Below, in pieces: positions 1-27,269 of a DNA stretch of 64,000 bases. The notes under the pieces were generated by a model. It searched no databases. It was not told the origin of the DNA and saw only the letters and a list, made by a program, of their open reading frames with translations. Position numbers and translations under genes: made by a program. The stretch is taken from the IMG/VR virus record IMGVR_UViG_3300031576_000002, positions 1 through 64,000 of that record. One strand, given 5' to 3'. Positions within the stretch are counted from its first letter, which is position 1. Each line of letters begins with the position of its first letter.

Positions 1-340
1 CGGTGGGGCTCACCCGCGCCGCAAATCGAGCGGTGCCCACGATCTCTGCCGTCTTCTGACGGTGCAGCCACACTTCAACGACAGGCGGCGGAGCTTGTGC
101 CGGGTTACCTGTCATGGACAGCCCCAGGCGCACCGCCATCGTGTCGAATACTCCGAGGAAGGTCTCGTAGCACATACGGCAGAAGCGCCCTGCCGTCGCC
201 GTGCCAAAAGGAGCCAGCGTGGGCTGCGGACCTCGCAGGCAACGGCTACACCGCGAGGATGTCTCGTAGGCCCACTCGGCGCCCATTACAACTGGGCTTT
301 GGTGATGGGGAGGACGCAGCGGCGTCCCCGGCACCCGCAT
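1..340 (-). CDS. Hypothetical protein with two CxxC pairs (runs off window edge)
   Basis: Manual translation from ATG at 340: open to the edge, contains CSRC and CRMC; starts 5 nt after the stop of 346-999. Confidence 0.4.
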   Translation of the reverse strand, partial: MRVPGTPLRPPHHQSPVVMGAEWAYETSSRCSRCLRGPQPTLAPFGTATAGRFCRMCYETFLGVFDTMAVRLGLSMTGNPAQAPPPVVEVWLHRQKTAEIVGTARFAARVSPT

Positions 341-345
341 CGGCT

Positions 346-999
346 TCAAGACACCGCCGGAAACAGTTTGAAGACCGACTCTTCCGTGTAGGAGACAGAT
401 CCGTCATGTGCAATGACTTCGGATCGAAATATCCGACCGTCTGCACGAACTACTTGGAATTCGTAATCACCGAAAGGGAAGATCCCGTCGAACGCTTTCC
501 CGTCTTGAGCCACGGGCAGCGCCGACGTAATCACTTCGCCACAACGGTAGATCTGTACCATCGTACCCACACCATTCAAAACGGTTTCCATCTCTCCGTC
601 TTGCAGGCGACCTGTCAGCCGTCCAATGGGCATGGCAACACACAAGTCCGTCTCCTCTCCTACATCGAACCGGACTTCGGTAGTTGCCGCGTACCAGCCT
701 TTCTTCAGAATGTGAATCTGGTAGTTACCCACCGGCGTAAAGCAGGGAACGACCTTGCGCCCCTCTTCCGTAACAGCAAAGTATCCGTCTCGCTGGTACT
801 CGCCCTTCTCGTCCGTCATCACGGTTCCGATCGGGCCAAACATGTCGTGAACGAACGTCATCTCCGCTCGATCAACAGGTCGCAAGAACTGATCCCGCAG
901 CGTACCCCGCAGAGAAAAGAGTTTCAGTTCCGCCGTCTTTGCGATTTCGATTTGCATTTCCGCCCCGTCCTTTATGGGTTCTCGCTCACACGAAACCAC
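346..999 (-). CDS. Hypothetical beta-rich protein, possibly carboxypeptidase-regulatory-like (prealbumin-like) repeats
   Basis: 'LRGTLRDQFLRPV...TDEKGEY...GNYQIHILKKGW' resembles this fold's pattern; a second degenerate repeat follows. Confidence 0.45.
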   Translation of the reverse strand: MVSCEREPIKDGAEMQIEIAKTAELKLFSLRGTLRDQFLRPVDRAEMTFVHDMFGPIGTVMTDEKGEYQRDGYFAVTEEGRKVVPCFTPVGNYQIHILKKGWYAATTEVRFDVGEETDLCVAMPIGRLTGRLQDGEMETVLNGVGTMVQIYRCGEVITSALPVAQDGKAFDGIFPFGDYEFQVVRADGRIFRSEVIAHDGSVSYTEESVFKLFPAVS

Positions 1000-14144: not shown

Positions 14145-14167
14145 AATAGATTCTCCTTTCACTTAGT

Positions 14168-14196
14168 AATCTAATAAGACTGCACCCACCTGTCAA
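14168..14196 (-). promoter_or_regulatory. Sigma70-type promoter with degenerate AGTCT-N4-AGACT palindrome
   Basis: TTGACA-17 nt-TAGATT; AATCT-AATA-AGACT at 14168-14181. Confidence 0.75.
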
Positions 14197-14233
14197 GAGG
14201 CCCCCGCACTATTTTTCCGGCCCTGCCAAAATG

Positions 14234-14398
14234 TTAATAAATTCGGCCGACTAGGAAGGCCGCCAGCACAAGTAAGAATCCGGCAGTGATACCTGCTGCG
14301 ATCTGGATTCTACGATTCCGACGGCGACGCTCGACCGCCCGGACTACCGCCTGCTCTTCGGCGGCTAGATAGAACGCTACCCAGACAGGATCCATCAT
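14234..14398 (-). CDS. 54-aa membrane protein (not in ORF track)
   Basis: Manual translation MMDPVWVAFYLAAEEQAVVRAVERRRRNRRIQIAAGITAGFLLVLAAFLVGRIY; ATGA overlap with upstream small ORF. Confidence 0.5.
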   Translation of the reverse strand: MMDPVWVAFYLAAEEQAVVRAVERRRRNRRIQIAAGITAGFLLVLAAFLVGRIY

Positions 14399-14544
14399 CC
14401 GACTTTCCAATCCACTCCCTGCTCTACTGCTCCAAAAAAAATCTCACAGGACAAGCCGCCTGTCCAGGGCCACGCAAAAAACAGAGGAAGCGCTTGTACC
14501 CACTTCACTACTTCCAGTACCCAGTAGTAGTCCCCCATCAGCAT
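14395..14544 (-). CDS. 49-aa hydrophobic protein (not in ORF track)
   Basis: Manual translation MLMGDYYWVLEVVKWVQALPLFFAWPW... Confidence 0.3.
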   Translation of the reverse strand: MLMGDYYWVLEVVKWVQALPLFFAWPWTGGLSCEIFFGAVEQGVDWKVG

Positions 14545-14730
14545 CCCAGGAGACCTTACATGCTCTCGCAGATTTCTGTAAAAATCCTCTTCAAGATTAT
14601 CTGTCTCAGATCATACATAGCAGGCTTCTAAAATCTCAGTACACGATTCCTGCCGGTCCTCTATACGCCAGCCCTTCTCGATACTCTCCAGAAAACTTCT
14701 CTTCGTGGTGGGCTCAAAGCTGCCCATACC

Positions 14731-15054
14731 TCAAATCTCCAGCCGCAAGTAGCGCAGCCACTCCTCAATCACGTAAGCAGTTGCGACCGCGCCGAACCCG
14801 AATGCGATTGGCTCAACTAACGGTTGCAGCGTCCAGCTCCAAGGCATCCACGCCAGCCGAAGCGCGGCGGCAATCCAAAAGCTCAGGCACAGCTTGCACG
14901 ACCAGGGCTTCCGCTCCCAGATGATCGGAAGCTGGCCTAGCAGCCGCACCAACGGCGGCGGCTGATCGGTCGTCTTGGCCGTCAGGAACGGAAGGTACTG
15001 CTCCGTAAAGAGATGCGCTGCGCCGTAAGCCGACAGCAAAAATACAAGTTCCAC
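14731..15054 (-). CDS. Membrane protein, DUF1360-like
   Basis: Hydrophobic segments and CKLCLSFW motif. Confidence 0.6.
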   Translation of the reverse strand: MELVFLLSAYGAAHLFTEQYLPFLTAKTTDQPPPLVRLLGQLPIIWERKPWSCKLCLSFWIAAALRLAWMPWSWTLQPLVEPIAFGFGAVATAYVIEEWLRYLRLEI

Positions 15055-15056
15055 GG

Positions 15057-15704
15057 TTACGCCATCCGTTTGTCTTGCTGCGAGTTGACTTCTGCACCTT
15101 CTGTAAACCGTCGAATTATATTCGCCTCCATCTCAGGACTCCAGTCATGCAATGTCCGATTTCCAACCCCTGCGCCATTCGGCCATTCCAGATGTCCGTG
15201 CGTCAGCTTCACCCGCTCAAAATACTGCGGATCTCTCAACTGCCCGTAGACAGAGCCAATCATTATTGGCCGGAAATCAATCGTCTTCTCTGTCCCGTCG
15301 TCGAACATCATCTGGATCACTCCATGTCGTACAATGCGGTAATCCAGAATTTGATAGAATCTTGGTGCAGCAGCTTTCTTACGCGAACGCTTCTCGTACG
15401 GAGCAATCCTGTTTGGATGCTGTCCTACCGAGAGAAGTTCCCAATTTGCAAGTAGCTCACTCGCATGCTCTCTCGCCCATAACTGCACTTCCTTCTCCGC
15501 CTTGATAGCATCTTCTGTCAGCCTGAACGCCGAGGGAATCTCGTACACTGCGCTGGTTCCGTCTGTAAGCTCTGCGTGAAAGTGCGGTAAATGGTGAGGT
15601 TCATCAAACTCCGCATTCACGTAAACCCGGACATTCTTCCAACGTGATACTTCCGCCATCGCTGCTCGTCTAAGCTGCCGGGTAACTTTCTGGAGCCGTT
15701 TCAA
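15057..15704 (-). CDS. DUF4160 (HicA-like)-DUF2442 fusion protein
   Basis: EPHHLPHFHAE...EVQLWAREHASELLANW, then 'IQMMFDDG..KTIDF...L.DPQYF..VKL..G.LEWPNG'; start TTG 15704 or ATG 15659. Confidence 0.75.
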   Translation of the reverse strand: MKRLQKVTRQLRRAAMAEVSRWKNVRVYVNAEFDEPHHLPHFHAELTDGTSAVYEIPSAFRLTEDAIKAEKEVQLWAREHASELLANWELLSVGQHPNRIAPYEKRSRKKAAAPRFYQILDYRIVRHGVIQMMFDDGTEKTIDFRPIMIGSVYGQLRDPQYFERVKLTHGHLEWPNGAGVGNRTLHDWSPEMEANIIRRFTEGAEVNSQQDKRMA

Positions 15705-16570
15705 GATGCACCCACTCTCCGAAAAAGATTCCAATGCTCCTGCGCAAATCGTTCCCATGTCAGATGTTTGACCAATCGCCCCTCTTCATCACTGTCGCGC
15801 AATCTGTCGAGGTACAATGACTGCACGACCTCTACCAAACTGGTCAACGATCCACGATTGTAATGAATCGCGGGATAGCTCACGGCGTAGCCAATCGGCG
15901 GAATGATCGTCTGCACTCCGCATGCAAGCGCTTCGAGCAGCGGTACGGGACCACCCTCGATGTCGGACGTGCAAAGCAGGTAGTCGAGCCCGGCGTAGAA
16001 CGCAGGCAGTTTCTCGATCTGGAACGGTTCGGCCGAAAGCCCCCAGCCTTCCCCCATGATCCGCAAGACCACATGCTCTCGCACCCAGGGGTCGAACGCA
16101 AAGCGATGAAGAAGGTCGCGTCCCTTGCGCGTATCGAGGTTGTTTGTGGGCATATCATAGGTGCGGCCTACGACTCCAAGCACGAGGCGAGGCTTGTAGA
16201 TTGGGTCAACTCCAAGCTCGATTACGGTGATCTTCTCTTCTGGAATCCCGAAACGAAGAAGATCTTGCTTGGTGTACTCGGACATCGCCACGCAGAAGTC
16301 AACCCGCTTGGCTACGTCAATGAAGATCGGGCCGAGGACTTTCGCGGAGTAGTGACAGAAGAAAGCCCCGGACTTTTTTGCGCGCCCTGGGATCCTATCA
16401 AAATAGCCGTAGTTAATCGAAAATCTGATCTCTGCGTCCAGCCAGTAGTTCTCGTTCCAGCGCACTTCGTCTGGCGCTGCGTCCCGGATAACGCGGGCGC
16501 ACTTCGGCAGAATCCAGTTGCCGGGCTCGGAACAGAGATTAACTTGCATTCTGACCGGCCTTCTTAGCAC
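15701..16570 (-). CDS. Glycosyltransferase, GT-B (GT4-like)
   Basis: DYLLCTSDIEGGPVPLLEALACG motif; TWERFAQEH terminus. Confidence 0.85.
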   Translation of the reverse strand: MLRRPVRMQVNLCSEPGNWILPKCARVIRDAAPDEVRWNENYWLDAEIRFSINYGYFDRIPGRAKKSGAFFCHYSAKVLGPIFIDVAKRVDFCVAMSEYTKQDLLRFGIPEEKITVIELGVDPIYKPRLVLGVVGRTYDMPTNNLDTRKGRDLLHRFAFDPWVREHVVLRIMGEGWGLSAEPFQIEKLPAFYAGLDYLLCTSDIEGGPVPLLEALACGVQTIIPPIGYAVSYPAIHYNRGSLTSLVEVVQSLYLDRLRDSDEEGRLVKHLTWERFAQEHWNLFRRVGAS

Positions 16571-17312
16571 GATAGCGTCTTCCGTACGCCTTCACCCTCT
16601 CCGCAAACGCAGCATCATTTTTTATCCTATTCCGTATTCTCAGGTTTCGGCACGCTTTACATATCCGGCTAGTACGAAACTTGCCTCTATTGAGTAGTAG
16701 ATTGTCTCCATCTAACCTGTGCAATCCTTTTACGCAGACATTCAGACGACTGGATACCTGGCTTGGATGATTACCACGCCTTAAATTCTCTTGAGGAGTG
16801 ACAGGCTCTAAATGCGCAGGATTCACACAAGAGGTGTTTTTACACAGATGGTCCAGGTGCAACTCGGGCGGAATAGGCGTAAGAGCAATATGTTCGTACG
16901 CCCAGCGGTGGGCTCTTACAGAAGTCCCTTTATAGTAGAATACGCCATAACCGTCTAAATCCTTCCCGGTCTTCCACTCAAAGCAGCCGCTCGCAGTTAC
17001 GGTAACGCACCTGTTAAATCTCTCCAACGCCTTCACTTCATAGCGAGAAGCATAAGGTTCCAAATGAAGTGGCCCAACACAGCGCATATTACCGCAGATA
17101 GGTAGCAACCGGGCACTCCAGGGCAAAGGACCAATCATCCGCTTGTAGATCCAGTGAGACGCAGACTCTTGACGAGGCTTGCCGCCAGAAAAAAAGTGTC
17201 TATGACTCGACTGCCATATAAGGCACCAAGAAGAATTATCAGGTTCTACCTTAGCCAAAAATCTACTAAAAGGGTCTCCCCCGCTCCCCGCAGGTCTGCC
17301 TAATTTTTTCAT
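16539..17312 (-). CDS. Free-standing HNH homing endonuclease (two HNH-like repeats)
   Basis: CVGPLHLEP and HLDHLCKNTSCVNPAHLEPVTPQEN; C-terminal CVKGLH...CKAC; visibly lower GC than flanks. Confidence 0.85.
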   Translation of the reverse strand: MKKLGRPAGSGGDPFSRFLAKVEPDNSSWCLIWQSSHRHFFSGGKPRQESASHWIYKRMIGPLPWSARLLPICGNMRCVGPLHLEPYASRYEVKALERFNRCVTVTASGCFEWKTGKDLDGYGVFYYKGTSVRAHRWAYEHIALTPIPPELHLDHLCKNTSCVNPAHLEPVTPQENLRRGNHPSQVSSRLNVCVKGLHRLDGDNLLLNRGKFRTSRICKACRNLRIRNRIKNDAAFAERVKAYGRRYRAKKAGQNAS

Positions 17313-18094
17313 CTCTTTCCTGCCTCTCGTGCAGCTACCAACTTTTCTATCAACTCCCCGTGCCGCAGCTTGATCCACATCGAATTCTCATAGTAAAAAC
17401 TGTGCGTAGGCTTCCCATAACTACGACTACGCCAGTGCCAAATAGGATGTTCTCGCTGACAGACCACTCGCCAGCCCCGCTCTTGAACTTGCAGACACGC
17501 CTCACAGTCTTCCCAAGAATGCGGAAAAAATAGTTGGAAGCCGCCAATCTCCTCCCACAGACTACGAGGCATGAATAACCCACACCCAGTCACGCCCTCC
17601 ACATAAGCGCTCACCTGATACTCCGGCCGGTCATCCTCGAACTCGGCGATATGGTGCCAGCTTCCATCTGCCCGGTACTCCGTACCCACATGGCCCAACT
17701 TGCCCGTATCGGGAAACAGATGCTTCACCCCTATTATACCGGCGCGCTCAAAACGACTGAAGCAAGCTAGGGTTGCGCCTAGCCACTCAGGGTCTCGAAA
17801 CTCCAGATCCGTGTTCATGTGCGCGACGTAGGGCGTCGTCGCCATTGCGAACACACGATTGACTAGAACCGCGGACATTCCCGTTCTAGCAAAGCGCTCG
17901 TACTCGATCGGATAACTGACCTTCTTGCGAACGGCCTCGACCAGATCGTAGATAGGCTCGGTCGAGCCATCATCCACGATGACAGCGACAAAGTCGCGAT
18001 ACGTCGTCTGGTCGAGCGTTTCCAGCGCCACGCGCAGGAGCGCCGCCTGATTGTAAGTCGGGAAGACTAGAGTGACTGCGGCGGAGTAAACCAT
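17309..18094 (-). CDS. Glycosyltransferase family 2
   Basis: FPTYN, IVDDGS, MNTD, EIGGF, ED motifs. Confidence 0.9.
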   Translation of the reverse strand: MVYSAAVTLVFPTYNQAALLRVALETLDQTTYRDFVAVIVDDGSTEPIYDLVEAVRKKVSYPIEYERFARTGMSAVLVNRVFAMATTPYVAHMNTDLEFRDPEWLGATLACFSRFERAGIIGVKHLFPDTGKLGHVGTEYRADGSWHHIAEFEDDRPEYQVSAYVEGVTGCGLFMPRSLWEEIGGFQLFFPHSWEDCEACLQVQERGWRVVCQREHPIWHWRSRSYGKPTHSFYYENSMWIKLRHGELIEKLVAAREAGKR

Positions 18095-19206
18095 GTCTTG
18101 TGCGCCAGCTCGTCGTACATTTTTGAGAGGGCTTCTGCGGCTCGCGCCCAATCAAAGTTATCTTGCACGTACTTCTGCGACTCGTCAGTCAGTGGCGCTT
18201 CGACCGCATTCGAGATCGCGTCTGCGATCGAGGAGATCGAACTGGGCTCGCAGAGGAATGCACCTGGAAATTCCTCGAAGTAGGTCTGACTCGTCAGCAC
18301 AATCTTACAGCCCGCCAGCGCGGCTTCCAGGGCTACGTTAGGCATCGGGTCGAACGTAGACGCCAGCACCAGAATCCGGCTCTGCCTGTACAGGTCCGCC
18401 AGCTTCGCCCGGCTCAGGTTGCCGGCGTAGTTGAAGCGGTACTTTCGGCACTGCGACCAGTAGGCGGCATCCAGCACTGGACCCGCTAGAGTAGGAACGA
18501 TGCCATGACGTTCGCAGGCTTGCAGCACCAGCTCCTGATTCTTCCGGGGACTGATGCTGCCCGCGATCAGTACCTCGACGGGCCTGTCAGCGTCCAAGTC
18601 GCCCTGGAAGCTGGAATCGACGCCTTTCGTGAGGATTCGGAACTGCACTGCGCCGTCCAGCCCCGGGTACTCCGCCGTCAGAACTTGCCGCTCTCGGGCG
18701 GAGTAGACGAGAAGCGCGGTGGCTCTTTCCAGTACCGCCCTGACTTTGGAAGGCTCTGGGATTCGATGGATGAAGCGGGGGAAGTAGATTGGGGTGACGA
18801 GATAAGGGCGATCTCTCCGCCAGATTTCTACCGCCGCGCTCAGCGTCCAGGGCCATGCTGCATTGTAGAGATGGTAGATCGGAAACGTCGCCGCGCTACT
18901 AACCTCGGAAGCACACGGCGCTTGGATTCCTATTTTGTCGAGCGCGGTGCGGAACCCGTCCATCTCGACAAAGTCGCCGCCATCCCACGAGGATCGGTCT
19001 CGATTGACGAAGAGAACTTGGGCACCCGTTACCGTTTTGGCTGCAAGGTCTTTCCGCGAGAAGGGTTCCAACAGCATGCGGGAGCGGGAACGTGAAAACG
19101 CATGCGCAGCCCCACGTCGCGCCTCCTCCATGCGAAGCGCATGGATCTGGGCTCTACGAGTAGGAGGGGGTGCGAACGGCAGCTTGCCAACAGTGCGCGC
19201 CATCAC
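18067..19206 (-). CDS. Glycosyltransferase, GT4-like (true start probably near 19077-19131)
   Basis: GGD..EM, GSISPRKNQ, STFDPMPNVALEAALAG, FDWARAA. Confidence 0.85.
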   Translation of the reverse strand: MMARTVGKLPFAPPPTRRAQIHALRMEEARRGAAHAFSRSRSRMLLEPFSRKDLAAKTVTGAQVLFVNRDRSSWDGGDFVEMDGFRTALDKIGIQAPCASEVSSAATFPIYHLYNAAWPWTLSAAVEIWRRDRPYLVTPIYFPRFIHRIPEPSKVRAVLERATALLVYSARERQVLTAEYPGLDGAVQFRILTKGVDSSFQGDLDADRPVEVLIAGSISPRKNQELVLQACERHGIVPTLAGPVLDAAYWSQCRKYRFNYAGNLSRAKLADLYRQSRILVLASTFDPMPNVALEAALAGCKIVLTSQTYFEEFPGAFLCEPSSISSIADAISNAVEAPLTDESQKYVQDNFDWARAAEALSKMYDELAHKTWFTPPQSL

Positions 19207-19262
19207 TGCCCGCGCTCGGCAAGTTCTCTAGGGGGCACTGCTGCGATAACAACCATAGCAGT

Positions 19263-20423
19263 TCAGCCTCCCTTTTCCGCTAACTCATTAAGTCTGCCTA
19301 CAGGCGTAGGCAGCCCGCCAATAAGGGCATAGACACGTAATGCAGCACTGAACGCGGCCCCAGTGTAGACACCCCTGTGAATTGTTACACCTTTGCGGCC
19401 CATCATTTCAGCCAATGCCGCGATACCGTACTCAACATCCTGGGCTTTCACCTTGGAAAGAACATCTGCGGAGCCCACTGCCAGAGCAGCGCCCAGCTTG
19501 GCCTTCGAGAGATCGAAGCCCTCAGCCAGCATGCCACGCTCCATGTTTTTTCGGATCGCTTCCGACAACTTGGTCGCGGAAGGATCCTTCACGTCCATGG
19601 CGCCAAACATGACCGTACCGCTACCAAGCACAGTACCCAGGTCACGGCGATCGAACGCCATGTCCGCAGGCGTAGCTGCCAAAACCGTGAACGCTTGCAG
19701 CATCGACAGCACGGCCAGATTCGGCTTCTCCCACTTCATCGTCAAAGAAAGGTTCGGCCAAATCTTCGGTATCCGGTTGTTGTCCACGACAATGAGCGGC
19801 GTCAGCTCGCCGCGATCGACCTTATCGAAGAGTGTCGTCAGAACCCTGTGCGCGTTGCGGCAAACGCCGGGCTGCTCCGTCGTCTGTGGAATCGTCACGA
19901 TTGCGCCGATTCTCGGATAAGCCGGATCAGGCCGCTCCAAGGTCTCGGTGTAGCGCTTGACCGTGTCGAAGATGTTCTGCCGGCCTTCCTTTTCAATCAT
20001 CGCGCCAGAGCCACTGCCGCCACCAGAACCGCTCGCGCAGAGTACGACCTCCACGTTTGCGCCGAGGCTGGTATGCAGCAGGTCGAAGATCGCGTCGCGC
20101 GCTTCATGGATCAAGTCGAGGCCAACATCGGGATTCTTTCCTGCGCCTCCGGTGTCTCCCGCAAGCAGCTTGCGCTCTGCGGGAAGAGCCTTGAGCTGTT
20201 CGAGGTCGCCGGGCGCGGTATTGATCGCGCAGACACGTCGCCAGCCAAGTCGCCAAGCGGTCTCCGCTAGACGGCCGCCTGCCTGGCCGATTCCTACGAA
20301 TCCAATTCGCACCGCGGACTGGAACGTATCCTCGTGCGGATCGACAACGGTTTCGATCTCCGGCAGCTCGAAACTCGCCAGCGCGTCAAGTCCCGTCTTT
20401 GGCTCAGTCATCCCGTCCCCCAT
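19263..20423 (-). CDS. Tubulin/FtsZ-superfamily GTPase (PhuZ/TubZ/CetZ-like)
   Basis: GIGQAGG, INT, GAGKN, GSGGGSGSG signature, VDNN, D..D. Confidence 0.9.
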   Translation of the reverse strand: MGDGMTEPKTGLDALASFELPEIETVVDPHEDTFQSAVRIGFVGIGQAGGRLAETAWRLGWRRVCAINTAPGDLEQLKALPAERKLLAGDTGGAGKNPDVGLDLIHEARDAIFDLLHTSLGANVEVVLCASGSGGGSGSGAMIEKEGRQNIFDTVKRYTETLERPDPAYPRIGAIVTIPQTTEQPGVCRNAHRVLTTLFDKVDRGELTPLIVVDNNRIPKIWPNLSLTMKWEKPNLAVLSMLQAFTVLAATPADMAFDRRDLGTVLGSGTVMFGAMDVKDPSATKLSEAIRKNMERGMLAEGFDLSKAKLGAALAVGSADVLSKVKAQDVEYGIAALAEMMGRKGVTIHRGVYTGAAFSAALRVYALIGGLPTPVGRLNELAEKGG

Positions 20424-20424
20424 T

Positions 20425-21108
20425 TCAGGCTTCCGCGCCTTCTTCCATTTTGCGGTACGTGTAGTAGTAATCGCGCAGCTCTCTCCCTGAAAGATTTTTA
20501 ACCTTTTGTACTATCTCCGTCTTAGCCCGTTCAGGGTGCTGCTGCACAACCATACGAGTCAGGTGTTCCCGCAAGTTCTCTTCCTCGGAAGGCCCCCAGG
20601 TACGAGGCCATGCCCCGTACCTACGAAGATAGCGTACGAGAGCAGATCCCTTCAACAGGTAGGTAGGATGTTCTACACCTTCAGAGAAGTAATCTCCAGG
20701 CTCTGCCTGGGGGTACTCTTCCCGCTGATGTTCATAGCGTTCTGTCCCCTCTTCCGCATACTGCCAGCCTGGCACATCAGCTTCTCCGCCCTCCCCCGAC
20801 ATAACCGCCAACAACCCGTAAGCTCGAATCTGAGAATCGGTCACGGCATGCAGATCAGTCCCTAGACCATTCGCAATGCACGAGACCATCGCTGTCAGGG
20901 ATCTATCGACATCTCTCTTCTCGGCCGCAAAAACAAGTTCCGGCAGTTCTATTCCTGCCTCCTCGTACTCCTCGTAGGCGCCGCTTGCGTTCGGCCCTAC
21001 GCCGGGCAAAAGGCCAAACGCGCGAATGCTTTCCTCATGAAACGTACAAGTACCGTGCACCAAAGTCTTAGACGCCAAAAGACTTAGGGCACGCTGAATA
21101 GATTGCAA
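20425..21108 (-). CDS. Putative ADP-ribosyltransferase-fold protein
   Basis: LVHGT...SI...GLLP followed by LVFAA, typical of the H-x-T ART clade; downstream Y and E positions not verified. Confidence 0.45.
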   Translation of the reverse strand: MQSIQRALSLLASKTLVHGTCTFHEESIRAFGLLPGVGPNASGAYEEYEEAGIELPELVFAAEKRDVDRSLTAMVSCIANGLGTDLHAVTDSQIRAYGLLAVMSGEGGEADVPGWQYAEEGTERYEHQREEYPQAEPGDYFSEGVEHPTYLLKGSALVRYLRRYGAWPRTWGPSEEENLREHLTRMVVQQHPERAKTEIVQKVKNLSGRELRDYYYTYRKMEEGAEA

Positions 21109-21111
21109 GTC

Positions 21112-24100
21112 TTACTCCTCGCGACCACCCAGCAAGTCCTTCGACCCTATCGAGCCTTCCTCGGTTCCATGCAGCGACTTCTCAAGCTGTGCCTCGGCAT
21201 CTGCAAGAGCCGCCGCCTCTTCCGTAGCATCGGCGTCCGTGAGCACACCTTCAAGTGTCAGCACTTTCCGAATCGTAGCAATTTCCTCGTCGGTTCGCCC
21301 AAGGCTGACCAGCTCGGCGTCAATGTCGTCCCACTGCATCGACAGAATCTCGCCGCCCTCTGGAGCGCTTTTGAGCTGCGCCTTCTTCCCGAATTTCTTC
21401 CACTCAGGATGAGAGGTATCTCCCTCACGCAGGAGTTCCACAAGAGGTTCCACGTCTTCGTAGTGAACGCCGCAGAACTTGCCTTCTTTATCCCAGATCC
21501 TTGAAGAGATGTGATCGGACGCAACTGGAAAGCGGTAGGGATCGTGACCGTTGCCGCTCGACTTCTTGGAAGTCTTACGACTGGCCGTAGGCATTGGCGG
21601 AGCCCCCGGCAAGCCCTTCGGCCCTTCCTCGCCTTCCGCGAAGAGGTCGGGGTGCTTGTCCATGATCTCTTTCTTGTACTCCTTCTCCTCGACGATCTGG
21701 CGGCGTTCTGCGTCCAGATCGAGTCCTGCTCCGGTTGCCATCGTGCGTTCCGAAATGATTCCACGTTCCATGAGGTCCCGCCAGGTAGAGAGCAGCGCAT
21801 TGTCCTGCGTCGGCTCCAAGCGCTTGCGCCACCAAATGCGGGGAACGATGAGCTGGCTTTCCTTCTTCTGAATGCGAACGCGATGACTGAGTTCCGCCGG
21901 TGTTCGCCGGTAGAACTCGTTCATTTTCGCTATTGCGACGAAGATTTTGGGATTGATCCAGCGCCGCTCGAACATACGGCGGAAGGTTTGGAGGCGCTCA
22001 ACCATAGTCTGTAGACCTGCGACAGCACTGGCGTAGCTGGCCTCACCGAGGAGGAAAGATTTTGAAATGCCGAGACCTAAGAATTTAACGCGCTCGATGA
22101 AGTCCCATTCGCGACTGGCTGAGTTGTGGGATGAGATAAAATTCGCCAAATACAGGTGATTGCCGTCCGTTTCAAGATTATAGACATTCCCTTTGTAAGG
22201 TCTGGAAGACACATCCTTGACAGAATACTGTACCCAGTCCCCTACAACTTGATTCCCAGCACTTCTCTTAAAAGTCCCTGTATACTTTTTACCATTCAAG
22301 AGTCCGTAAAGTTTTCTAGCGCTCGCCTGCGTAAGCGTAATTGTGTGACGCTTAGGAGCGTTTACATGATTATTTCTACGATGGTACGCCTCTTCCCGGA
22401 TGCCTAAGCTAGGAGCGAACCCCGTAATCTGTAGCAGTCTTACCAACTGTGAAGCTAGCCAAGGCGAAGTAGTAGAGGCCATAAGAGAAAGACTTTCCCA
22501 CTTCATTACGTATTTGCGCGTCCAGCCATCTCCAAGAAAATAGCCTTTCAAAAGTTCAAGCTGGAGGTCTTCCTCCCAGCAAAAAATACTTCTATGCAGC
22601 CACTTCTCTTGTGAGTATTTATCGGCGTATTTAATCAAAAGCTCTGTCATCTTACGAGCGGGCTCTTTCGGGTAGCAGCCCCGGACGTGAACTCCGTTAC
22701 CATAGGCTTTGTAAACTGCGGGCTTTACTCCAAACTCTTTCCGCATAATGTCCATAATGTCTTTTATGATTGTCGTGTCGCTCTTATCCAGGGCAATAGA
22801 AATCCCAGCATCACGGTTCCTATTGACGGATACCGCACATCCATCTGCAAGATAGTATCCGATCAGACGAGCTACATCGGGCGATACAGGTCTAGTCTTT
22901 TTCCCTTTTATATGTCTCGGCGCGACGAGCAGGTCGCCCGCGCGGATTTCAGACGCGGGCGCCTCAGTCGGTACCGCACACGAAGAATATCGAAATTTTG
23001 AAAAAAATTTACCGCAATAGCCATTATGCTTTCTAGGCTTTGCCTTCTTACAAGGCTCCCCATTTTTATAGCAGGGCGGCCTTTTAATGACGAGCAGCCT
23101 GTGTTCAGCGGTCACGCAAACAGGCTCCGGCAAACCTTGTACGCACAGTGTTACCATAGTACCCTTGTATTTTAAGGGTTTCACATTCAACGCCTTTACC
23201 GGCGTACCAGAGCCTCCTTGTAGAATCGTATCAGGCTCCACAAATTCTATAGGGCACTGTGTTCCGTCCTCCAGCGTGATAAGCGTTCCAGCCGGATGAC
23301 ACAAAAGGCGATCACTTACACCAACAAGCTCCACACTCAATCCGTAATTATAAACGATTGCCGCGAATGGATCCGTCTCGGCAATCGCCAACATGTTAAG
23401 AAACGACTCTTCGTCGGACTTAGACGGTAAAAATCCCGTAGCGGGGTCTCCGAGTTTGAAGATTCTAAGAGGGGCGGCATTACGCTGCGCGACTGCCAGA
23501 TAGGCATTGATTAGGAAATCGCTGACCATCTGAATCTGGTATAGCCTTGACAACATGCTCGTGCCCAGATGGGTATACGGTGAAATCTTTCGAGCAATAT
23601 ATGTGGCATTCAAAGGATCCAGAGGTATTGGAATTCCTGCAATCGCGTAATGAATGATCTTGGGCGGCAATTTTGCCCTCGCCCTCACAAGCCTCGGATC
23701 TTGACTGGTCGCCAATGCTCGCAATTCTGGAGTCGGCTTCAAGTCAATAACAGGCTCGAAACCGGGTACTGGTACAGGAGTTACTGCAAGGTAGTCAGGA
23801 TTGTAAACCAGCAGGTTAGACCAATAATTCTTACGAGTGTCATAGATAAGATGAGGCACAACTTTTCCAGTAATCAGATACTCTCTTGCCAATTCCGGAA
23901 GCCAGCTTAAAAGATTGAGATCCGACATCATACTCTCATAAATCTCTTTGACTCGCGGATCATCTTCGAGCCCGAGAAGATCAAATTCCGAGAACGGAAG
24001 CTCGCTCCAGACGTCCAAGGCCGCCCCCACCGCAGGATCGCTGCGGTACATGTGCCGCCAAATTGCATTGGCCTGCACTTCACTACGGGGGTAGTAGAAC

Positions 24101-24423
24101 TTGTCTGGCGTCGAGTAGCGTGGATCGTAATAGATCGGCGTACTGATCTGCGCCGTAGACCTTCCCCCCGCGACCGTGCCCGACGTAAAGCCTGCATTCG
24201 TCGCAGACGCAGAACTCCCAAATCCTCCGAACGGGTCGGACTGCTGCGCGGTTCGGTGGAACCCGCGCCGGGTGTAGACCGCACCTGTTGCTCTAGGCTC
24301 GGAGGAGAATCCGCCTCGTGCCGACGTCTCATTGAAGAGACGCGACATGAAGTCACCTGACGCTTGATCGCGGTATTTTTTACCGTCGTTCGCCATTGTA
24401 TTTAACCGCCCCACATCCCACAC
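21112..24423 (-). CDS. Phage portal protein interrupted by an intein
   Basis: 'DPAVGAALDVWSELPFS', 'GTSM', 'RNAAPLRIFKLGD', 'LGLGISKSFLLGEASYASA' large-phage portal pattern; lies in the head/packaging region with TerL. Confidence 0.8.
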   Translation of the reverse strand: MWDVGRLNTMANDGKKYRDQASGDFMSRLFNETSARGGFSSEPRATGAVYTRRGFHRTAQQSDPFGGFGSSASATNAGFTSGTVAGGRSTAQISTPIYYDPRYSTPDKFYYPRSEVQANAIWRHMYRSDPAVGAALDVWSELPFSEFDLLGLEDDPRVKEIYESMMSDLNLLSWLPELAREYLITGKVVPHLIYDTRKNYWSNLLVYNPDYLAVTPVPVPGFEPVIDLKPTPELRALATSQDPRLVRARAKLPPKIIHYAIAGIPIPLDPLNATYIARKISPYTHLGTSMLSRLYQIQMVSDFLINAYLAVAQRNAAPLRIFKLGDPATGFLPSKSDEESFLNMLAIAETDPFAAIVYNYGLSVELVGVSDRLLCHPAGTLITLEDGTQCPIEFVEPDTILQGGSGTPVKALNVKPLKYKGTMVTLCVQGLPEPVCVTAEHRLLVIKRPPCYKNGEPCKKAKPRKHNGYCGKFFSKFRYSSCAVPTEAPASEIRAGDLLVAPRHIKGKKTRPVSPDVARLIGYYLADGCAVSVNRNRDAGISIALDKSDTTIIKDIMDIMRKEFGVKPAVYKAYGNGVHVRGCYPKEPARKMTELLIKYADKYSQEKWLHRSIFCWEEDLQLELLKGYFLGDGWTRKYVMKWESLSLMASTTSPWLASQLVRLLQITGFAPSLGIREEAYHRRNNHVNAPKRHTITLTQASARKLYGLLNGKKYTGTFKRSAGNQVVGDWVQYSVKDVSSRPYKGNVYNLETDGNHLYLANFISSHNSASREWDFIERVKFLGLGISKSFLLGEASYASAVAGLQTMVERLQTFRRMFERRWINPKIFVAIAKMNEFYRRTPAELSHRVRIQKKESQLIVPRIWWRKRLEPTQDNALLSTWRDLMERGIISERTMATGAGLDLDAERRQIVEEKEYKKEIMDKHPDLFAEGEEGPKGLPGAPPMPTASRKTSKKSSGNGHDPYRFPVASDHISSRIWDKEGKFCGVHYEDVEPLVELLREGDTSHPEWKKFGKKAQLKSAPEGGEILSMQWDDIDAELVSLGRTDEEIATIRKVLTLEGVLTDADATEEAAALADAEAQLEKSLHGTEEGSIGSKDLLGGREE
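22123..23301 (-). mobile_element. Intein with LAGLIDADG homing endonuclease (393 aa)
   Basis: Starts CHPAGTLI, ends VYNLET..NHLYLANFISSHN/S; LIGYYLADG and LLKGYFLGDG; lower GC. Confidence 0.92.
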
Positions 24424-24821
24424 TACCTAAAAATAGCCCAATCCTTAGACTCCTCAGCATCCGGAAAGTAAGCGATCCAGGCAGGTACAGGTATTCTCAG
24501 CAGGTACCCCACTTGTAGGCGATGATTGCCTTCAATCCCGTGAGGTCCGATAACAACAGGGCGCCGGAAGCCTACTTTTCTCACACTTTTCAGAAGACCT
24601 TCTAGTCTTTTCAGAGGCTCCGCTTGAAAAAAATCTCTCACCATATCTCCAGCCACGAACGGGTCTACCTGATCGCGCCGCCACACGATTATATCTTCTT
24701 CACTTACATCCAAAGTCGCTAATGCTTCATCTCTCACATTCGCTGGGAGTTCGGAAGTCTTCAAGTCAGCAGAGCTTCTCAGTGTACTTGCCACTTTTAG
24801 CAGACTATTCATTAGATTCAC
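24423..24821 (-). CDS. ParB/Srx-like domain protein
   Basis: LKSVRKVGFRRPVVI...IEGNHRL...IPVP. Confidence 0.75.
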   Translation of the reverse strand: MNLMNSLLKVASTLRSSADLKTSELPANVRDEALATLDVSEEDIIVWRRDQVDPFVAGDMVRDFFQAEPLKRLEGLLKSVRKVGFRRPVVIGPHGIEGNHRLQVGYLLRIPVPAWIAYFPDAEESKDWAIFR

Positions 24822-25129
24822 CGGAGAGCTTCAATCGCTGTCTTCAGTTTACCGAGCGAAGTCTCAATCTCATTCAAATTGGGCTGCATCAGTCGAATAG
24901 CCTGCACGATTTCACTTTCCATCCGGTCCAGCACTTCAGCCGGCGGGGCTCCGGGTGGCTTCTCCCTCCGCATTCGTTGCGTCTTTTCGAGTGCTTCCTT
25001 GAGCGCTCCTAGCGCTCTGGACACAGCAGTCGTCAAGCCGCTTGCTGTGGGCGAGGAGGAATACTGCAATCCACTGGATAGCAAATCGGGCGGAAGGAGT
25101 GATCCAGGTCTCAAGCTGTTGTCCGTCAC
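24818..25129 (-). CDS. Hypothetical helical protein (true start uncertain; overlaps next ORF)
   Basis: ORF track; ATGA-type coupling at 24818-24821. Confidence 0.4.
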   Translation of the reverse strand: MTDNSLRPGSLLPPDLLSSGLQYSSSPTASGLTTAVSRALGALKEALEKTQRMRREKPPGAPPAEVLDRMESEIVQAIRLMQPNLNEIETSLGKLKTAIEALR

Positions 25130-25556
25130 GGTTCATCCTCAGCATGCACCTATCGGACTTCTTCTCAAAGTACAGCGTAAGGTCAGCGTCAAGAAATCGT
25201 GTAACGGCCCCTTGCCCGCCAAAAGCTTCTGGAAGCGGTACCGGCTTTGGCCTCGGCACGAACACGGGTCGGAGCATCTTGTTCCATACCAGCGCGATCT
25301 TGAAGAGTCTATCACGGCAGCCGGGATACGTGCGATCTTTCGTGTTGTAGAGCGCACTCGGCCCGAACTGCGGTATGGCTCCGTCAAGGATCGAGAGCAA
25401 GATCGCGGGACGGTACCGCCGCATCCTGAGAAGCCGCTGGATCTTTTTCGGGAGGGTGCGTACCGGCGTATCCGATACAGGTAGCCCGTCCCTGCGCTGA
25501 ATGTGAATCCGGGAACGGGAGTAGTTCAGCGCGTGATCGTGATAGATCAGTTGCAC
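24936..25556 (-). CDS. Hypothetical protein
   Basis: ORF track. Confidence 0.45.
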   Translation of the reverse strand: MQLIYHDHALNYSRSRIHIQRRDGLPVSDTPVRTLPKKIQRLLRMRRYRPAILLSILDGAIPQFGPSALYNTKDRTYPGCRDRLFKIALVWNKMLRPVFVPRPKPVPLPEAFGGQGAVTRFLDADLTLYFEKKSDRCMLRMNRDGQQLETWITPSARFAIQWIAVFLLAHSKRLDDCCVQSARSAQGSTRKDATNAEGEATRSPAG

Positions 25557-25558
25557 TT

Positions 25559-26284: not shown

Positions 26285-26290
26285 AGGAGG

Positions 26291-27094: not shown

Positions 27095-27269
27095 TCAATC
27101 GCAGCGCAGCTTTCACTTTCCCAAGATCCATCTCGAACGTCGTGTCCCCGATCTTGAACCATACAGGAGCAAAGTGCTCGGGAATGTTCGAGGGCGGACG
27201 AATGATTTCAACTTCGACCTGCCTCGCTTCTTTCGACTCTGGCTCGAAGTATTTTGCACGAACTCTCAT
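27057..27269 (-). CDS. Small hypothetical protein
   Basis: TAATG coupling with upstream ORF. Confidence 0.55.
   Translation of the reverse strand: MRVRAKYFEPESKEARQVEVEIIRPPSNIPEHFAPVWFKIGDTTFEMDLGKVKAALRLIDEEASHVAVSH

What the first reader, a model, noticed from the sequence alone, without database searches (positions are those of the whole stretch)
19263..20423. Phage tubulin of the GQAGG (CetZ/TubZ-like) type
Full tubulin/FtsZ signature. The GQAGG start resembles CetZ/TubZ more than FtsZ's GGGG. Established: PhuZ positions DNA or the phage nucleus in some jumbo phages, and TubZ partitions plasmids and prophages. No nuclear-shell gene was recognised here; a ParB-like gene lies 4 kb away.
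Basis: partly seen in the sequence, partly recalled or inferred. Interest (0 to 1): 0.6.

Follow-up and report, generated by a model that had tools for sequence, protein, structure and literature searches.

The report
TubZ-like tubulin in a jumbo phage
A 205-kb uncultivated phage from a cave metagenome encodes an intact tubulin/FtsZ-type GTPase that belongs to a large, apparently unstudied phage-only branch near plasmid TubZ. It has none of the partners known for phage tubulins (no nuclear shell, no TubR/centromere) and sits in the head-gene operon right after the portal gene.

Summary
The ORF is real. It lies at window 19263-20423 on the minus strand and encodes 386 aa. It passes Pfam Tubulin, and all GTP-binding loops and both T7 catalytic aspartates are intact. 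A confident AlphaFold model (pLDDT 89) is closest to TubZ (Z 37), then CetZ (35.5) and FtsZ (~30). Profile comparisons rank RepX/TubZ first and PhuZ far last.

It is not a recent host FtsZ capture. Its best relative anywhere is 36-38% identical, and it falls inside a phage-only clade: 289 IMG/VR contigs against five MAG contigs in 185,579 species genomes.

This clade has no C-terminal tail. Instead it has an acidic N-terminal stretch with a conserved LP[D/E]I motif (FELPEIE in this protein).

The likely complete genome has no chimallin (positive control passed), integrase, ParA or ParB_N. There is no TubR-like gene or iteron array beside the tubulin. The gene follows portal and a 227-aa ORF with gaps of 1-3 nt. 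Relatives also sit next to terminase, portal or baseplate genes, or next to replication genes.

Best reading: a GTP-driven filament that organises lytic infection without a phage nucleus. That function is inferred, not shown. It is a new variant of a known kind, of moderate interest.

The parts
19263..20423 (-). Tubulin/FtsZ-superfamily GTPase gene, 386 aa (P0001), TubZ-like fold
   Evidence: ORF. Pfam Tubulin 33.6 bits. AF2 model pLDDT 89.4. TubZ-Bt Z 37.2 with 342 residues aligned. RepX profile E 2.8e-42.
20352..20372 (-). N-terminal acidic peptide motif FELPEIE (residues 18-24), inside a disordered, acidic 38-residue extension (9 D/E, 1 K/R)
   Evidence: The motif [LMIV]P[DE][IFLY] is found in 60 of 71 clade members, about 30 residues before the G-box. 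It appears in 6.8% of shuffled N-termini and in 0 of 24 Group I proteins. pLDDT is below 50 for residues 1-9 and 19-30. Coordinates.
20274..20294 (-). T1 loop / G-box GIGQAGG (residues 44-50), phosphate binding
   Evidence: G44, G46 and G49 are invariant in alignments A2 and A4. Column profile.
20004..20024 (-). T4 tubulin signature GGGSGSG (residues 134-140)
   Evidence: The glycines are invariant in 71 of 71 Group II sequences and align with FtsZ GGGTGTG.
19641..19655 (-). T7 synergy loop FDRRD (residues 257-261) with both catalytic aspartates
   Evidence: D258 and D261 are conserved in 71 of 71 Group II members and align with E. coli FtsZ D209 and D212.
19266..19301 (-). Short C-terminal helix VGRLNELAEKGG. 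The protein ends here, with no H11 extension and no tail.
   Evidence: All Group II proteins end 10-20 residues after GGLxxP..LxEL. Group I and TubZ carry about 70 further residues. Model helix 375-385.
20425..21108 (-). 227-aa ORF immediately upstream; its stop is 1 nt before the tubulin ATG. Function unknown, possibly an ADP-ribosyltransferase-like fold. Not a dedicated tubulin partner.
   Evidence: Junction sequence. Nine phage homologues, none beside a tubulin. Only weak ART signals. No wHTH detected.
21112..24423 (-). Portal protein gene (1103 aa) interrupted by a LAGLIDADG intein; first gene of the tightly packed portal / 227-aa / tubulin string
   Evidence: phrog_16240 portal E 1.9e-80. 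LAGLIDADG_3 and Intein_splicing. A 3-nt gap to the next ORF. No promoter-like or terminator-like site on the minus strand between these genes.
15701..19206 (-). Downstream block: GT1 (18067-19206), GT2 (17309-18151), HNH endonuclease (16539-17378), GT4/GT1 fragment-like (15701-16570)
   Evidence: Pfam and PHROG hits. Sugar-metabolism genes also flank relatives' tubulins.

Best explanation
The gene encodes a functional, polymerising tubulin/FtsZ-superfamily GTPase with a TubZ-like fold. It belongs to a large phage-specific clade, here called Group II.

Proposed mechanism:
- GTP binds through loops T1-T6.
- Head-to-tail assembly inserts the T7 loop (D258, D261) into the next subunit's nucleotide pocket. 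This triggers hydrolysis and gives dynamic filaments.
- The acidic N-terminal LP[D/E]I peptide replaces the C-terminal tails of TubZ, PhuZ and FtsZ. It acts either as the inter-subunit contact or as the cargo or adaptor handle.
- The gene is co-transcribed with the portal gene in a lytic 205-kb phage that has no chimallin shell. The filament most likely organises the infected cell by positioning replicating or packaging DNA, or procapsids. That would be a PhuZ-like job done without a phage nucleus, rather than plasmid-style segregation.

Shown: the ORF, the motifs, the fold, clade membership, gene context and the absence of partners.
Inferred: polymerisation, the role of the N-terminal peptide, late co-expression and the cellular function.
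For: Fold and motifs:
- Intact ORF with complete T1, T3, T4 and T7 motifs. The catalytic aspartates are 100% conserved in 71 clade members.
- Confident model: pLDDT 89.4, pTM 0.88.
- Fold ranking: TubZ-Bt Z 37.2, TubZ-Bc 37.1, CetZ2 35.5, c-st TubZ 32.1, FtsZ ~30; Foldseek gives the same order.
- Profile ranking: RepX 2.8e-42, then CetZ2, then FtsZ. hhalign: RepX 99.1% (7e-19), FtsZ 7e-15, PhuZ 1.7e-4.

Phage-specific family:
- 27 word-search hits at 36% identity or less.
- 289 IMG/VR contigs against 5 MAG contigs in 185,579 genomes.
- The query sits in a 71-row clade with SH-aLRT 97.
- Conserved N-terminal motif and missing C-terminal tail.

Lytic phage without a nucleus:
- No chimallin, with a phiKZ positive control.
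- No integrase, ParA or ParB_N.
- The genome is probably complete, given a 227-nt end overlap.
- Portal relatives are Rctr197k, PaBG, Erwinia Y3 and phage G, not Chimalliviridae.

Late-operon context:
- Portal, the 227-aa ORF and the tubulin are separated by 1-3 nt with no promoter or terminator between them.
- Independent lineages place the tubulin next to packaging or structural genes: TerL-portal-TUB (clade A), TerL-TUB-portal (L025, L040, L043), baseplate-TUB (L010), and portal...TUB (L001).
Against: - No experiment and no RNA data exist; the only run holding the sequence is cave-metagenome DNA.
- The homodimer prediction gave no verdict, so polymerisation rests on motif conservation alone.
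- Context is not uniform. In clade B and in Group I the gene sits in the replication module (RecA, DnaB, UvsW). The link to portal may therefore be synteny rather than function.
- The query is on a long branch (1.63) and its Pfam score only just passes (33.6 against 33).
- Deep relationships to TubZ, RepX and c-st TubZ are an unresolved polytomy, and CetZ could not be put in the tree.
- The host is unknown.
- CheckV rates the record 85% complete, so a missing partner cannot be fully excluded.
Confidence: 0.5

Rival explanations
1. It is the motor of a type III (TubZRC-like) partition system. It would segregate the phage genome as an extrachromosomal element during pseudolysogeny or a carrier state, as in Clostridium phage c-st.
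For: The nearest solved relatives by profile and fold are the plasmid and prophage partition proteins RepX/TubZ and c-st TubZ. A 12-bp x 8.6 tandem array exists elsewhere in the genome, at G000 104529-104631. The 227-aa upstream protein has no assigned function.
Against: Canonical operons have a gene of about 80-115 aa (wHTH TubR in pBtoxis and c-st) directly upstream. Here the upstream gene is a 227-aa protein whose homologues occur in phages without a tubulin, and it gives no wHTH signal. No iterons lie within 14000-27500. The 12-bp array is 84 kb away and lies inside an ORF that codes EESM repeats. The TubR-binding C-terminal tail is absent. No integrase, ParA or ParB_N was found.
Confidence: 0.2
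2. It manipulates the host's own FtsZ or cell division, for example by co-polymerising with or poisoning the Z-ring, to block division and enlarge the cell for a big burst.
For: With the single sequence, the best PDB sequence hits are FtsZ (1.5e-7). The structure aligns with FtsZ at Z ~30. Large phages commonly interfere with host division (general knowledge).
Against: The profile and the fold both prefer TubZ over FtsZ. It is only 19-26% identical to FtsZ structures. No FtsZ_C domain was reported by Pfam, and it lacks the FtsZ C-terminal peptide. Clade-wide conservation of both catalytic aspartates fits an autonomous dynamic polymer better than a capping poison. The family is conserved across phages whose hosts probably differ, at similar divergence from all FtsZ.
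Confidence: 0.15
3. It is a PhuZ-like spindle serving a replication compartment built from an unrecognised, non-chimallin shell protein.
For: It is a jumbo phage with many genes of unknown function. Tubulin and compartment formation go together in Chimalliviridae (PMC7824862, PMC10299810).
Against: There is no chimallin, with a positive control. Similarity to PhuZ is negligible. The portal lineage is PaBG / phage G-like. Relatives, and weakly this genome, encode sigma-70-type factors, which suggests reliance on host RNA polymerase. The test for multisubunit RNA polymerase was uninformative.
Confidence: 0.07
4. It is a decaying or non-functional remnant.
For: The Pfam score is marginal, the terminal branch is long, and there is no C-terminal tail.
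Against: The frame is open over its full length. All catalytic and nucleotide-binding residues are kept. The tail-less architecture is shared by all 71 clade members. The model is highly confident.
Confidence: 0.03

Closest known systems
TubZ / RepX of Bacillus megaplasmids (pBtoxis TubZ-Bt; pXO1-type RepX, TubZ-Bc)
   Same: Best fold match (Z 37.2 and 37.1, 333-342 residues aligned). Best profile match (RepX 2.8e-42; hhalign 99.1%). Gln-containing T1 loop, the DN motif and the two acidic T7 residues are shared. An N-terminal helix before the core also aligns (model 13..386 against TubZ 6..393).
   Different: Only 17-19% identity. No long H11 helix and no C-terminal tail. No TubR gene and no tubC iterons. 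Encoded in a lytic phage's head operon rather than at a plasmid replication/partition locus. Carries an acidic N-terminal LP[D/E]I peptide that TubZ lacks. Pfam TubZ-like_C scores below its cut-off (20.6 against 26).
TubZ of Clostridium botulinum phage c-st (TubZRC plus TubY)
   Same: Phage-encoded, TubZ-type fold (Z 32.1). hhalign 98.4%, 9.5e-15. IGQGGG T1 loop.
   Different: c-st TubZ has an 81-aa regulator (TubR) directly upstream and a MerR-type gene downstream, and it serves a plasmid-prophage. None of these is present here.
PhuZ of Chimalliviridae (phiKZ gp039, 201phi2-1 gp59)
   Same: A tubulin-superfamily protein of a jumbo phage. Like PhuZ, it carries an acidic terminal peptide outside the core.
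   Different: Sequence similarity is essentially nil (BLASTP E 2.2; hhalign 49%; no hit to phrog_4733). PhuZ is not among the top 50 structural matches. The acidic peptide is N-terminal here, not C-terminal. There is no chimallin.
CetZ (archaeal cell-shape tubulin homologues)
   Same: Second-best fold (CetZ2 Z 35.5, rmsd 2.3, 310 residues aligned) and second-best profile match (5.8e-32).
   Different: CetZ is archaeal and cellular. About 20% identity. No CetZ sequence with a reference was available, so it is not in the tree.
Bacillus phage G gp138 ('FtsZ-like')
   Same: The only hit in 50,697 deposited phage genomes (24% identity, E 4e-7). Phage G also shares a portal lineage with this phage.
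   Different: It is preceded by a 98-aa gene, a TubR-like position. It falls outside the clade in the tree. It matches phrog_17961 and phrog_4733, whereas this protein matches no PHROG.
FtsZ
   Same: Same superfamily and the same catalytic T7 aspartates.
   Different: T1 is GGGGGN in FtsZ and GQAGG here. Pfam reported no FtsZ_C domain, and there is no C-terminal FtsA/ZipA-binding peptide. Lower fold and profile scores than TubZ. Not nested in cellular FtsZ.

Membership tests
Tubulin/FtsZ superfamily | Pfam Tubulin GTPase domain above the gathering score | tested here: met
   PF00091 33.6 bits against a cut-off of 33, E 6e-8. Genome-wide search gives 33.5 bits. The family profile against PDB reaches 148 bits.
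Tubulin/FtsZ superfamily | Nucleotide-binding loops T1 and T4 (GGGTG[ST]G-type signature) and a T7 loop with catalytic acidic residues | tested here: met
   GIGQAGG, GGGSGSG and FDRRD are present. D258 and D261 align with EcFtsZ D209 and D212 and are conserved in 71 of 71 clade members.
Tubulin/FtsZ superfamily | Two-domain fold: Rossmann-like GTPase domain, H7 helix, C-terminal activation domain | tested here: met
   AF2 pLDDT 89.4. Z 29-37 against TubZ, CetZ and FtsZ over 290-342 residues.
Tubulin/FtsZ superfamily | GTP-dependent polymerisation | not testable with these tools
   The homodimer plus GTP prediction gave no verdict. This needs biochemistry.
TubZ (type III partition, TubZRC) | Closest sequence and fold relationship to TubZ/RepX | tested here: met
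   Top by profile, hhalign, Foldseek and VIA. The margin over CetZ is small (Z 37.2 against 35.5) and the tree is unresolved at depth.
TubZ (type III partition, TubZRC) | Small wHTH DNA-binding adaptor TubR encoded directly upstream | tested here: not met
   The upstream gene is a 227-aa protein with no HTH hit, and it is not linked to tubulins elsewhere. The reference operons all have an 81-115 aa gene upstream.
TubZ (type III partition, TubZRC) | Centromere tubC: an array of short direct repeats next to the operon | tested here: not met
   Only two-copy, chance-level repeats in 14000-27500. There are two weak tandem repeats in the whole window. The one strong 12-bp array in the genome is 84 kb away and lies in coding sequence.
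TubZ (type III partition, TubZRC) | Extended C-terminal helix H11 plus a flexible tail that binds TubR and supports assembly | tested here: not met
   The protein ends at residue 386, about 10 residues into the last helix. TubZ-Bt, RepX and the Group I relatives continue for about 50-100 residues.
TubZ (type III partition, TubZRC) | Pfam TubZ-like_C domain | tested here: inconclusive
   PF22453 scores 20.6 bits, below the cut-off of 26; E 4.8e-4.
PhuZ (Chimalliviridae spindle tubulin) | Sequence membership in the PhuZ family | tested here: not met
   No hit to phrog_4733, while phiKZ PhuZ scores 4.6e-118. BLASTP E 2.2. hhalign probability 49%.
PhuZ (Chimalliviridae spindle tubulin) | Co-occurrence with the chimallin nuclear shell | tested here: not met
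   phrog_4795 is absent from the 205-kb genome; the phiKZ control scores 1.8e-232. The phiKZ ChmA protein query is also negative.
PhuZ (Chimalliviridae spindle tubulin) | Acidic C-terminal tail that docks on the neighbouring subunit | tested here: not met
   There is no C-terminal tail. An acidic peptide exists, but at the N-terminus.
FtsZ | FtsZ_C domain and a conserved C-terminal peptide; GGGTGG-type T1 | tested here: not met
   Pfam reports only Tubulin and a weak TubZ-like_C. T1 has Gln. There is no tail.
CetZ | Placement within the archaeal CetZ clade | not tested
   No CetZ sequence with a reference was available for the tree. Only PDB comparisons were possible (second best).

The most novel reading that the evidence does not exclude
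Group II phage tubulins are a third architectural class of viral cytoskeletal filament. They have a TubZ-like core whose partner-binding or assembly peptide has moved to the N-terminus (acidic LP[D/E]IP motif). They are encoded beside terminase, portal or baseplate genes of large phages that form no nucleus. They would act as a track or scaffold that brings procapsids and replicating DNA together for packaging, i.e. cytoskeleton-guided virion assembly without a chimallin compartment.
Probability: 0.25. Interest if true: 0.75.

Novelty: new variant of a known kind. Interest (0 to 1): 0.55.

Why it matters
Phage tubulins are so far understood through two paradigms: PhuZ spindles that centre and rotate the chimallin nucleus, and TubZRC partition of plasmid-prophages.

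This gene represents a widespread phage-only branch, with hundreds of metagenomic contigs up to about 200 kb, that fits neither paradigm:
- no shell gene;
- no TubR gene or centromere;
- no C-terminal tail;
- a conserved N-terminal acidic motif;
- repeated placement beside packaging and structural genes.

If these proteins polymerise, cytoskeleton-based organisation of infection would be more common among large phages than the nucleus-forming family alone suggests. They would also give a compact new tubulin (386 aa) with an unusual tail topology for studying filament assembly and cargo coupling.

Tried and rejected
- **Homodimer prediction:** Complex prediction with two copies of the protein plus GTP scored 0.00 against a mark of 0.42. 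The verdict was 'no answer', so it counts neither for nor against self-assembly.
- **Genome scan with alignment A2:** It was repeated with the closer alignment A4.
- **Multisubunit RNA polymerase test:** PF00623 was silent in the phiKZ control as well, so the test is uninformative.
- **Search for a conserved partner gene:** all-against-all BLAST, clustering and phmmer of neighbours across 84 loci found no neighbour family shared with this phage.
- **The 227-aa upstream protein as adaptor:**
  - Its homologues are not linked to tubulins.
  - The model is only pLDDT 66.8.
  - Foldseek found nothing below E 1.
  - VIA-wide reached at most Z 7, on a helical tail.
  - It is rejected as a TubR-like adaptor, but its fold remains unsettled.
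- **Clade-A HMMs:** the portal and terminase HMMs did not reach this phage's portal. The link is through the shared phrog_16240 only.
- **DNA similarity:** blastn of 18000-24500 against phage genomes found no match.
- **RNA evidence:** only one cave-metagenome DNA sample holds the sequence.
- The word search and the IMG/VR scan had already placed the protein.
- **Recent FtsZ capture:** rejected.
- **ParB-like neighbour:** rejected.
Full report
**1. The observation**

Window 19263-20423 matches one open reading frame exactly. The frame is on the minus strand, not the plus strand: ATG at 20423, stop codon ending at 19263, 386 residues. The plus-strand frame is full of stops.

The protein (P0001) passes the Pfam Tubulin model, though only just: 33.6 bits against a cut-off of 33, E 6e-8. 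It also gives a sub-threshold hit to TubZ-like_C. It matches no PHROG family. The single sequence finds FtsZ, CetZ and RepX chains in the PDB.

All functional motifs are in place:

| Motif | Sequence | Residues |
|---|---|---|
| T1 | GIGQAGG | 44-50 |
| T3 | GGAGKN | 92-97 |
| T4 | GGGSGSG | 134-140 |
| DN pair | DN | 214-215 |
| T7 | FDRRD | 257-261 |

D258 and D261 align with the catalytic D209 and D212 of E. coli FtsZ. TubZ-Bt, c-st TubZ and a Paenibacillus TubZ-like protein have Gln there, while FtsZ has GGGGGN.

**2. The genome**

The window is the first 64 kb of a single 205,227-bp IMG/VR virus record, 56% G+C, with most genes on the minus strand. The last 227 nt repeat the first 227 nt (226 of 227 identical). 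The assembly therefore closes on itself and is probably complete, although CheckV estimates 85%. The only sequencing run that holds the region is a cave metagenome, and it is DNA only.

It is a tailed phage. The evidence:
- Portal gene at 21112-24423 (phrog_16240, E 1.9e-80), interrupted by a LAGLIDADG intein.
- Large terminase at 34665-36680 and a helicase at 11958-14162.

The portal's nearest deposited relatives are Virus Rctr197k (37%), Pseudomonas phage PaBG, Erwinia phage Y3 and Bacillus phage G. None is a phiKZ-like phage.

**3. Which tubulin it is**

An AlphaFold2 model built on 28 homologues is confident: pLDDT 89.4, pTM 0.88. Only residues 1-9 and 19-30 are disordered.

| Comparison | TubZ / RepX | CetZ | FtsZ | PhuZ |
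|---|---|---|---|---|
| Foldseek, PDB | TubZ-Bt 1.8e-22 | CetZ2 2.9e-21 | ~1e-18 | not in the 50 rows listed |
| VIA-align | TubZ-Bt Z 37.2 (342 aligned); TubZ-Bc 37.1; c-st TubZ 32.1 | CetZ2 35.5 | ~30 | not in top 50 |
| Family profile vs PDB | RepX/TubZ-Bc 2.8e-42; TubZ-Bt 1.6e-25 | CetZ2 5.8e-32 | M. jannaschii 6e-31 | not in the 60 shown |
| hhalign | RepX 99.1%, 7e-19; c-st TubZ 9.5e-15 | not available | E. coli 7e-15 | phiKZ 49%, 1.7e-4 |

BLASTP against phiKZ PhuZ gives E 2.2. The protein is therefore TubZ-like, with CetZ close behind. It is not a PhuZ.

**4. Relatives**

- The word search found 27 relatives, the best only 36% identical.
- Among 50,697 deposited phage genomes only Bacillus phage G gp138 is hit, at 24% identity.
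- Among plasmids there are distant TubZ-like genes of Paenibacillus and Alicyclobacillus.
- A pattern scan of IMG/VR found 289 viral contigs encoding a relative. The best 80 are all 31-37% identical.
- The same kind of scan over one genome for each of 185,579 prokaryotic species found five. All are MAG contigs at 30% identity or less over the full-length matches (35-37% only over two fragments of 63-73 residues): Phycisphaeraceae twice, Nanopelagicales, Margulisiibacteriota and Methanophagales.

The family is essentially viral.

A maximum-likelihood tree was built from 104 sequences and 394 columns, using IQ-TREE quick mode with the reference proteins added. It splits the phage proteins into two groups:
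- **Group I:** 25 rows (SH-aLRT 89), among them phiKZ PhuZ, whose placement on a branch of 9.3 changes per column carries no meaning. The other 24 are phage proteins of 416-550 aa.
- **Group II:** 71 rows, SH-aLRT 97. It contains the query, which pairs with P0002.

Deeper links to TubZ-Bt, RepX, c-st TubZ and phage G gp138 form an unresolved polytomy. The query has a long terminal branch (1.63). No CetZ sequence with a reference was available, so CetZ is not in the tree.

**5. Architecture**

Group I proteins, like TubZ, continue about 70 residues past the core into a strongly basic tail (...KIKxKxSAxGKL...DRRRK). All Group II proteins stop 10-20 residues after GGLxxP..(K/R)LxEL. The query ends ...RLNELAEKGG. 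The short C-terminus is therefore a clade trait, not a truncation.

Group II instead has an acidic N-terminal extension. The median net charge is -10 over 37 residues, against 0 in Group I. The extension carries a short conserved motif about 30 residues before the G-box, typically D(I/L)xLPDIP(M/L/I)P. The pattern [LMIV]P[DE][IFLY] occurs in 60 of 71 Group II N-termini, in 6.8% of shuffled N-termini and in 0 of 24 Group I proteins. The query has FELPEIE (residues 18-24) in a segment with nine acidic residues and one basic residue. This lies in the low-confidence part of the model.

By analogy with established systems, this peptide is the obvious candidate for a subunit contact or a partner handle. 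The analogies are PhuZ's acidic C-terminal tail docking on the next subunit, TubZ's tail binding TubR, and FtsZ's C-terminal peptide binding FtsA/ZipA. This is inference from the literature, not a test made here.

**6. Partners and context**

*Absent partners*
- The chimallin HMM (phrog_4795) finds nothing in the genome, while it scores 1.8e-232 on phiKZ in the same call. A protein query with phiKZ ChmA is also negative.
- There is no integrase, no ParA/CbiA and no ParB_N anywhere.
All ORFs of 100 aa or more within about 7 kb were scanned with Pfam.

*Comparison with canonical tubZ operons*
- Each canonical operon fetched for comparison has a small gene of 81-115 aa directly upstream: pBtoxis, pBc239, Planococcus, Paenibacillus, phage G and c-st.
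- Here the upstream gene (20425-21108) encodes a 227-aa protein. Its nine homologues lie in other phages, and the two contexts examined have no tubulin nearby.
- That protein gives only weak hints of an ADP-ribosyltransferase-type fold and none of a winged helix.
- No iteron array lies near the gene.
- The only strong tandem array in the genome is 12 bp x 8.6 at 104529-104631. It is 84 kb away, inside a small ORF that codes EESM repeats.

*Local gene order*
- Portal, the 227-aa ORF and the tubulin are separated by 3 and 1 nt, with no promoter-like or terminator-like site between them on that strand. They probably form one late transcript, but this is inferred.
- Three glycosyltransferase genes and an HNH endonuclease follow downstream.

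*Context in relatives*
- Clade A of Group II shows sigma factor, ERCC4, TerL, portal, tubulin.
- A sister group has TerL, tubulin, portal (L025, L040, L043).
- L010 has a baseplate wedge gene directly upstream.
- The closest relative, L001, has an intein-bearing portal four genes upstream.
- Clade B and Group I place the tubulin in replication modules, with RecA, DnaB and primase, or UvsW-like helicase and DnaB.
- Homologues of those replication genes exist in this phage, but 36-40 kb away.
- Sugar-nucleotide or glycosyltransferase genes recur near the tubulin in both groups. I have no explanation for this.

**7. Interpretation**

- *Secure:* this is a real, intact tubulin/FtsZ-superfamily GTPase with a TubZ-like fold. 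It belongs to a phage-specific clade with an unusual tail topology, in a probably complete, apparently lytic 205-kb phage without a nuclear-shell gene.
- *Likely (about 0.75):* it forms GTP-dependent dynamic filaments, because every residue needed for binding and for polymerisation-coupled hydrolysis is conserved across the clade. The one computational test of self-association gave no verdict.
- *Most probable role (about 0.5):* spatial organisation of lytic infection, that is, positioning replicating or packaging DNA or procapsids. This rests on the missing partition partners, the missing lysogeny genes and the repeated placement beside packaging and structural genes.
- *Rivals:* a TubZRC-type partition role in a carrier state (0.2), interference with host FtsZ (0.15), a spindle for an unrecognised compartment (0.07), and a dead gene (0.03).

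**8. Novelty**

The literature available here describes three kinds of phage tubulin:
- PhuZ in Chimalliviridae (PMC7950403, PMC10299810, PMC13282480);
- TubZ of c-st, cited in PMC7824862;
- the FtsZ-like gene of phage G (PMC12484599).

Surveys mention tubulin homologues in huge or jumbo phages only in the PhuZ/nucleus context (PMC7162821, PMC9123017, PMC12625630). The broad FtsZ/tubulin phylogeny in PMC9871819 does not cover viruses. I found no description of this clade, its N-terminal motif or its link to portal genes. The library is incomplete, however, so this is not proof of absence.

I rate the finding a new variant of a known kind, of moderate interest. The fold and the general idea of a phage tubulin are familiar. 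The architecture, the missing partners and the breadth of the family are not.

Noticed in passing
window 22123-22980 (within portal ORF 21112-24423, minus strand): The portal gene carries an intein with a LAGLIDADG homing-endonuclease domain. It runs from about residue 482 to 767 (Cys482 ... His-Asn767 | Ser768). G+C drops to 0.475 in 22001-24000. The closest tubulin-bearing relative, L001, also has an intein-bearing portal.
   Followed up: partly
window 20425-21108 (minus strand): The 227-aa ORF between portal and tubulin belongs to a small phage family (9 homologues, one fused to a GNAT acetyltransferase). Invariant residues include H18-G19-T20, Y45, E57 and PGDY137-140. Signals of an ADP-ribosyltransferase-type fold are weak but all point the same way: Tpt1/KptA and PARP Pfam hits at E 0.004-0.016, Atlas DarT/PARP clusters at TM 0.42-0.43, and a VIA-wide match to an ADPR complex (9ld3) at Z 5.9. 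The fold is not settled.
   Followed up: partly
window 1-227 and G000:C1:205001-205227: The contig ends overlap by 227 nt (226 of 227 identical). The assembly is therefore circular or terminally redundant and the genome of about 205,000 bp is probably complete, although IMG/VR lists it as linear and CheckV estimates 85%.
   Followed up: partly
G000:C1:104529-104631 (outside the window): A strong tandem array of a 12-bp unit (TCTTCCATGGAC) x 8.6, 95% matches. It lies inside a 122-aa minus-strand ORF and would encode (EESM)n. It has the size and period of a tubC-like centromere, but it is 84 kb from the tubulin and in coding sequence.
   Followed up: partly
window 15701-19206 (minus strand); loci L001, L002, L004, L005, L020, L030: Three glycosyltransferase genes (GT1, GT2, GT4-like), with an HNH endonuclease ORF between two of them, follow the tubulin directly. 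Sugar-nucleotide or glycosyltransferase genes recur next to the tubulin in both Group I and Group II relatives. The reason is unknown.
   Followed up: partly
alignment A2 / tree rows P0004-P0027 (Group I) versus Group II: The two phage tubulin groups have opposite tail designs. Group I has a C-terminal extension of about 70 residues ending in a very basic tail (up to +12 over the last 25 residues). Group II has no C-terminal tail but has an acidic N-terminal extension with an LP[D/E]I motif.
   Followed up: yes
window 15057-15758 (minus strand): A 233-aa protein combines DUF4160 and DUF2442, two small domains usually found as separate proteins. It is the gene about 4 kb from the tubulin, and it is not ParB-like.
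   Followed up: no
window 56885-58267 and 59458-61029 (minus strand): A DnaB-type helicase and a UvsW-like helicase here are homologous (24-30% identity) to the genes that flank the tubulin in the Group I phages L002, L004 and L005. In this phage they lie 36-40 kb from the tubulin, so the tubulin has a different genomic position relative to a shared replication module.
   Followed up: partly
window 47714-47794 (minus strand); window 55679-56290 (minus strand): A single tRNA-Arg(TCG) gene. A 203-aa ORF has a weak Sigma70_r2 match (E 0.006, below the cut-off). Relatives encode clear sigma-70-type factors, which suggests use of the host RNA polymerase.
   Followed up: no
loci L097-L101 (genome contigs): The only cellular-genome records with a relative are five MAG contigs: Phycisphaeraceae twice, Nanopelagicales, Margulisiibacteriota and Methanophagales. 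The full-length matches are 29-30% identical; the two short fragments are 35-37% identical. They may be phage contigs binned into MAGs, and they give no host for this phage.
   Followed up: partly
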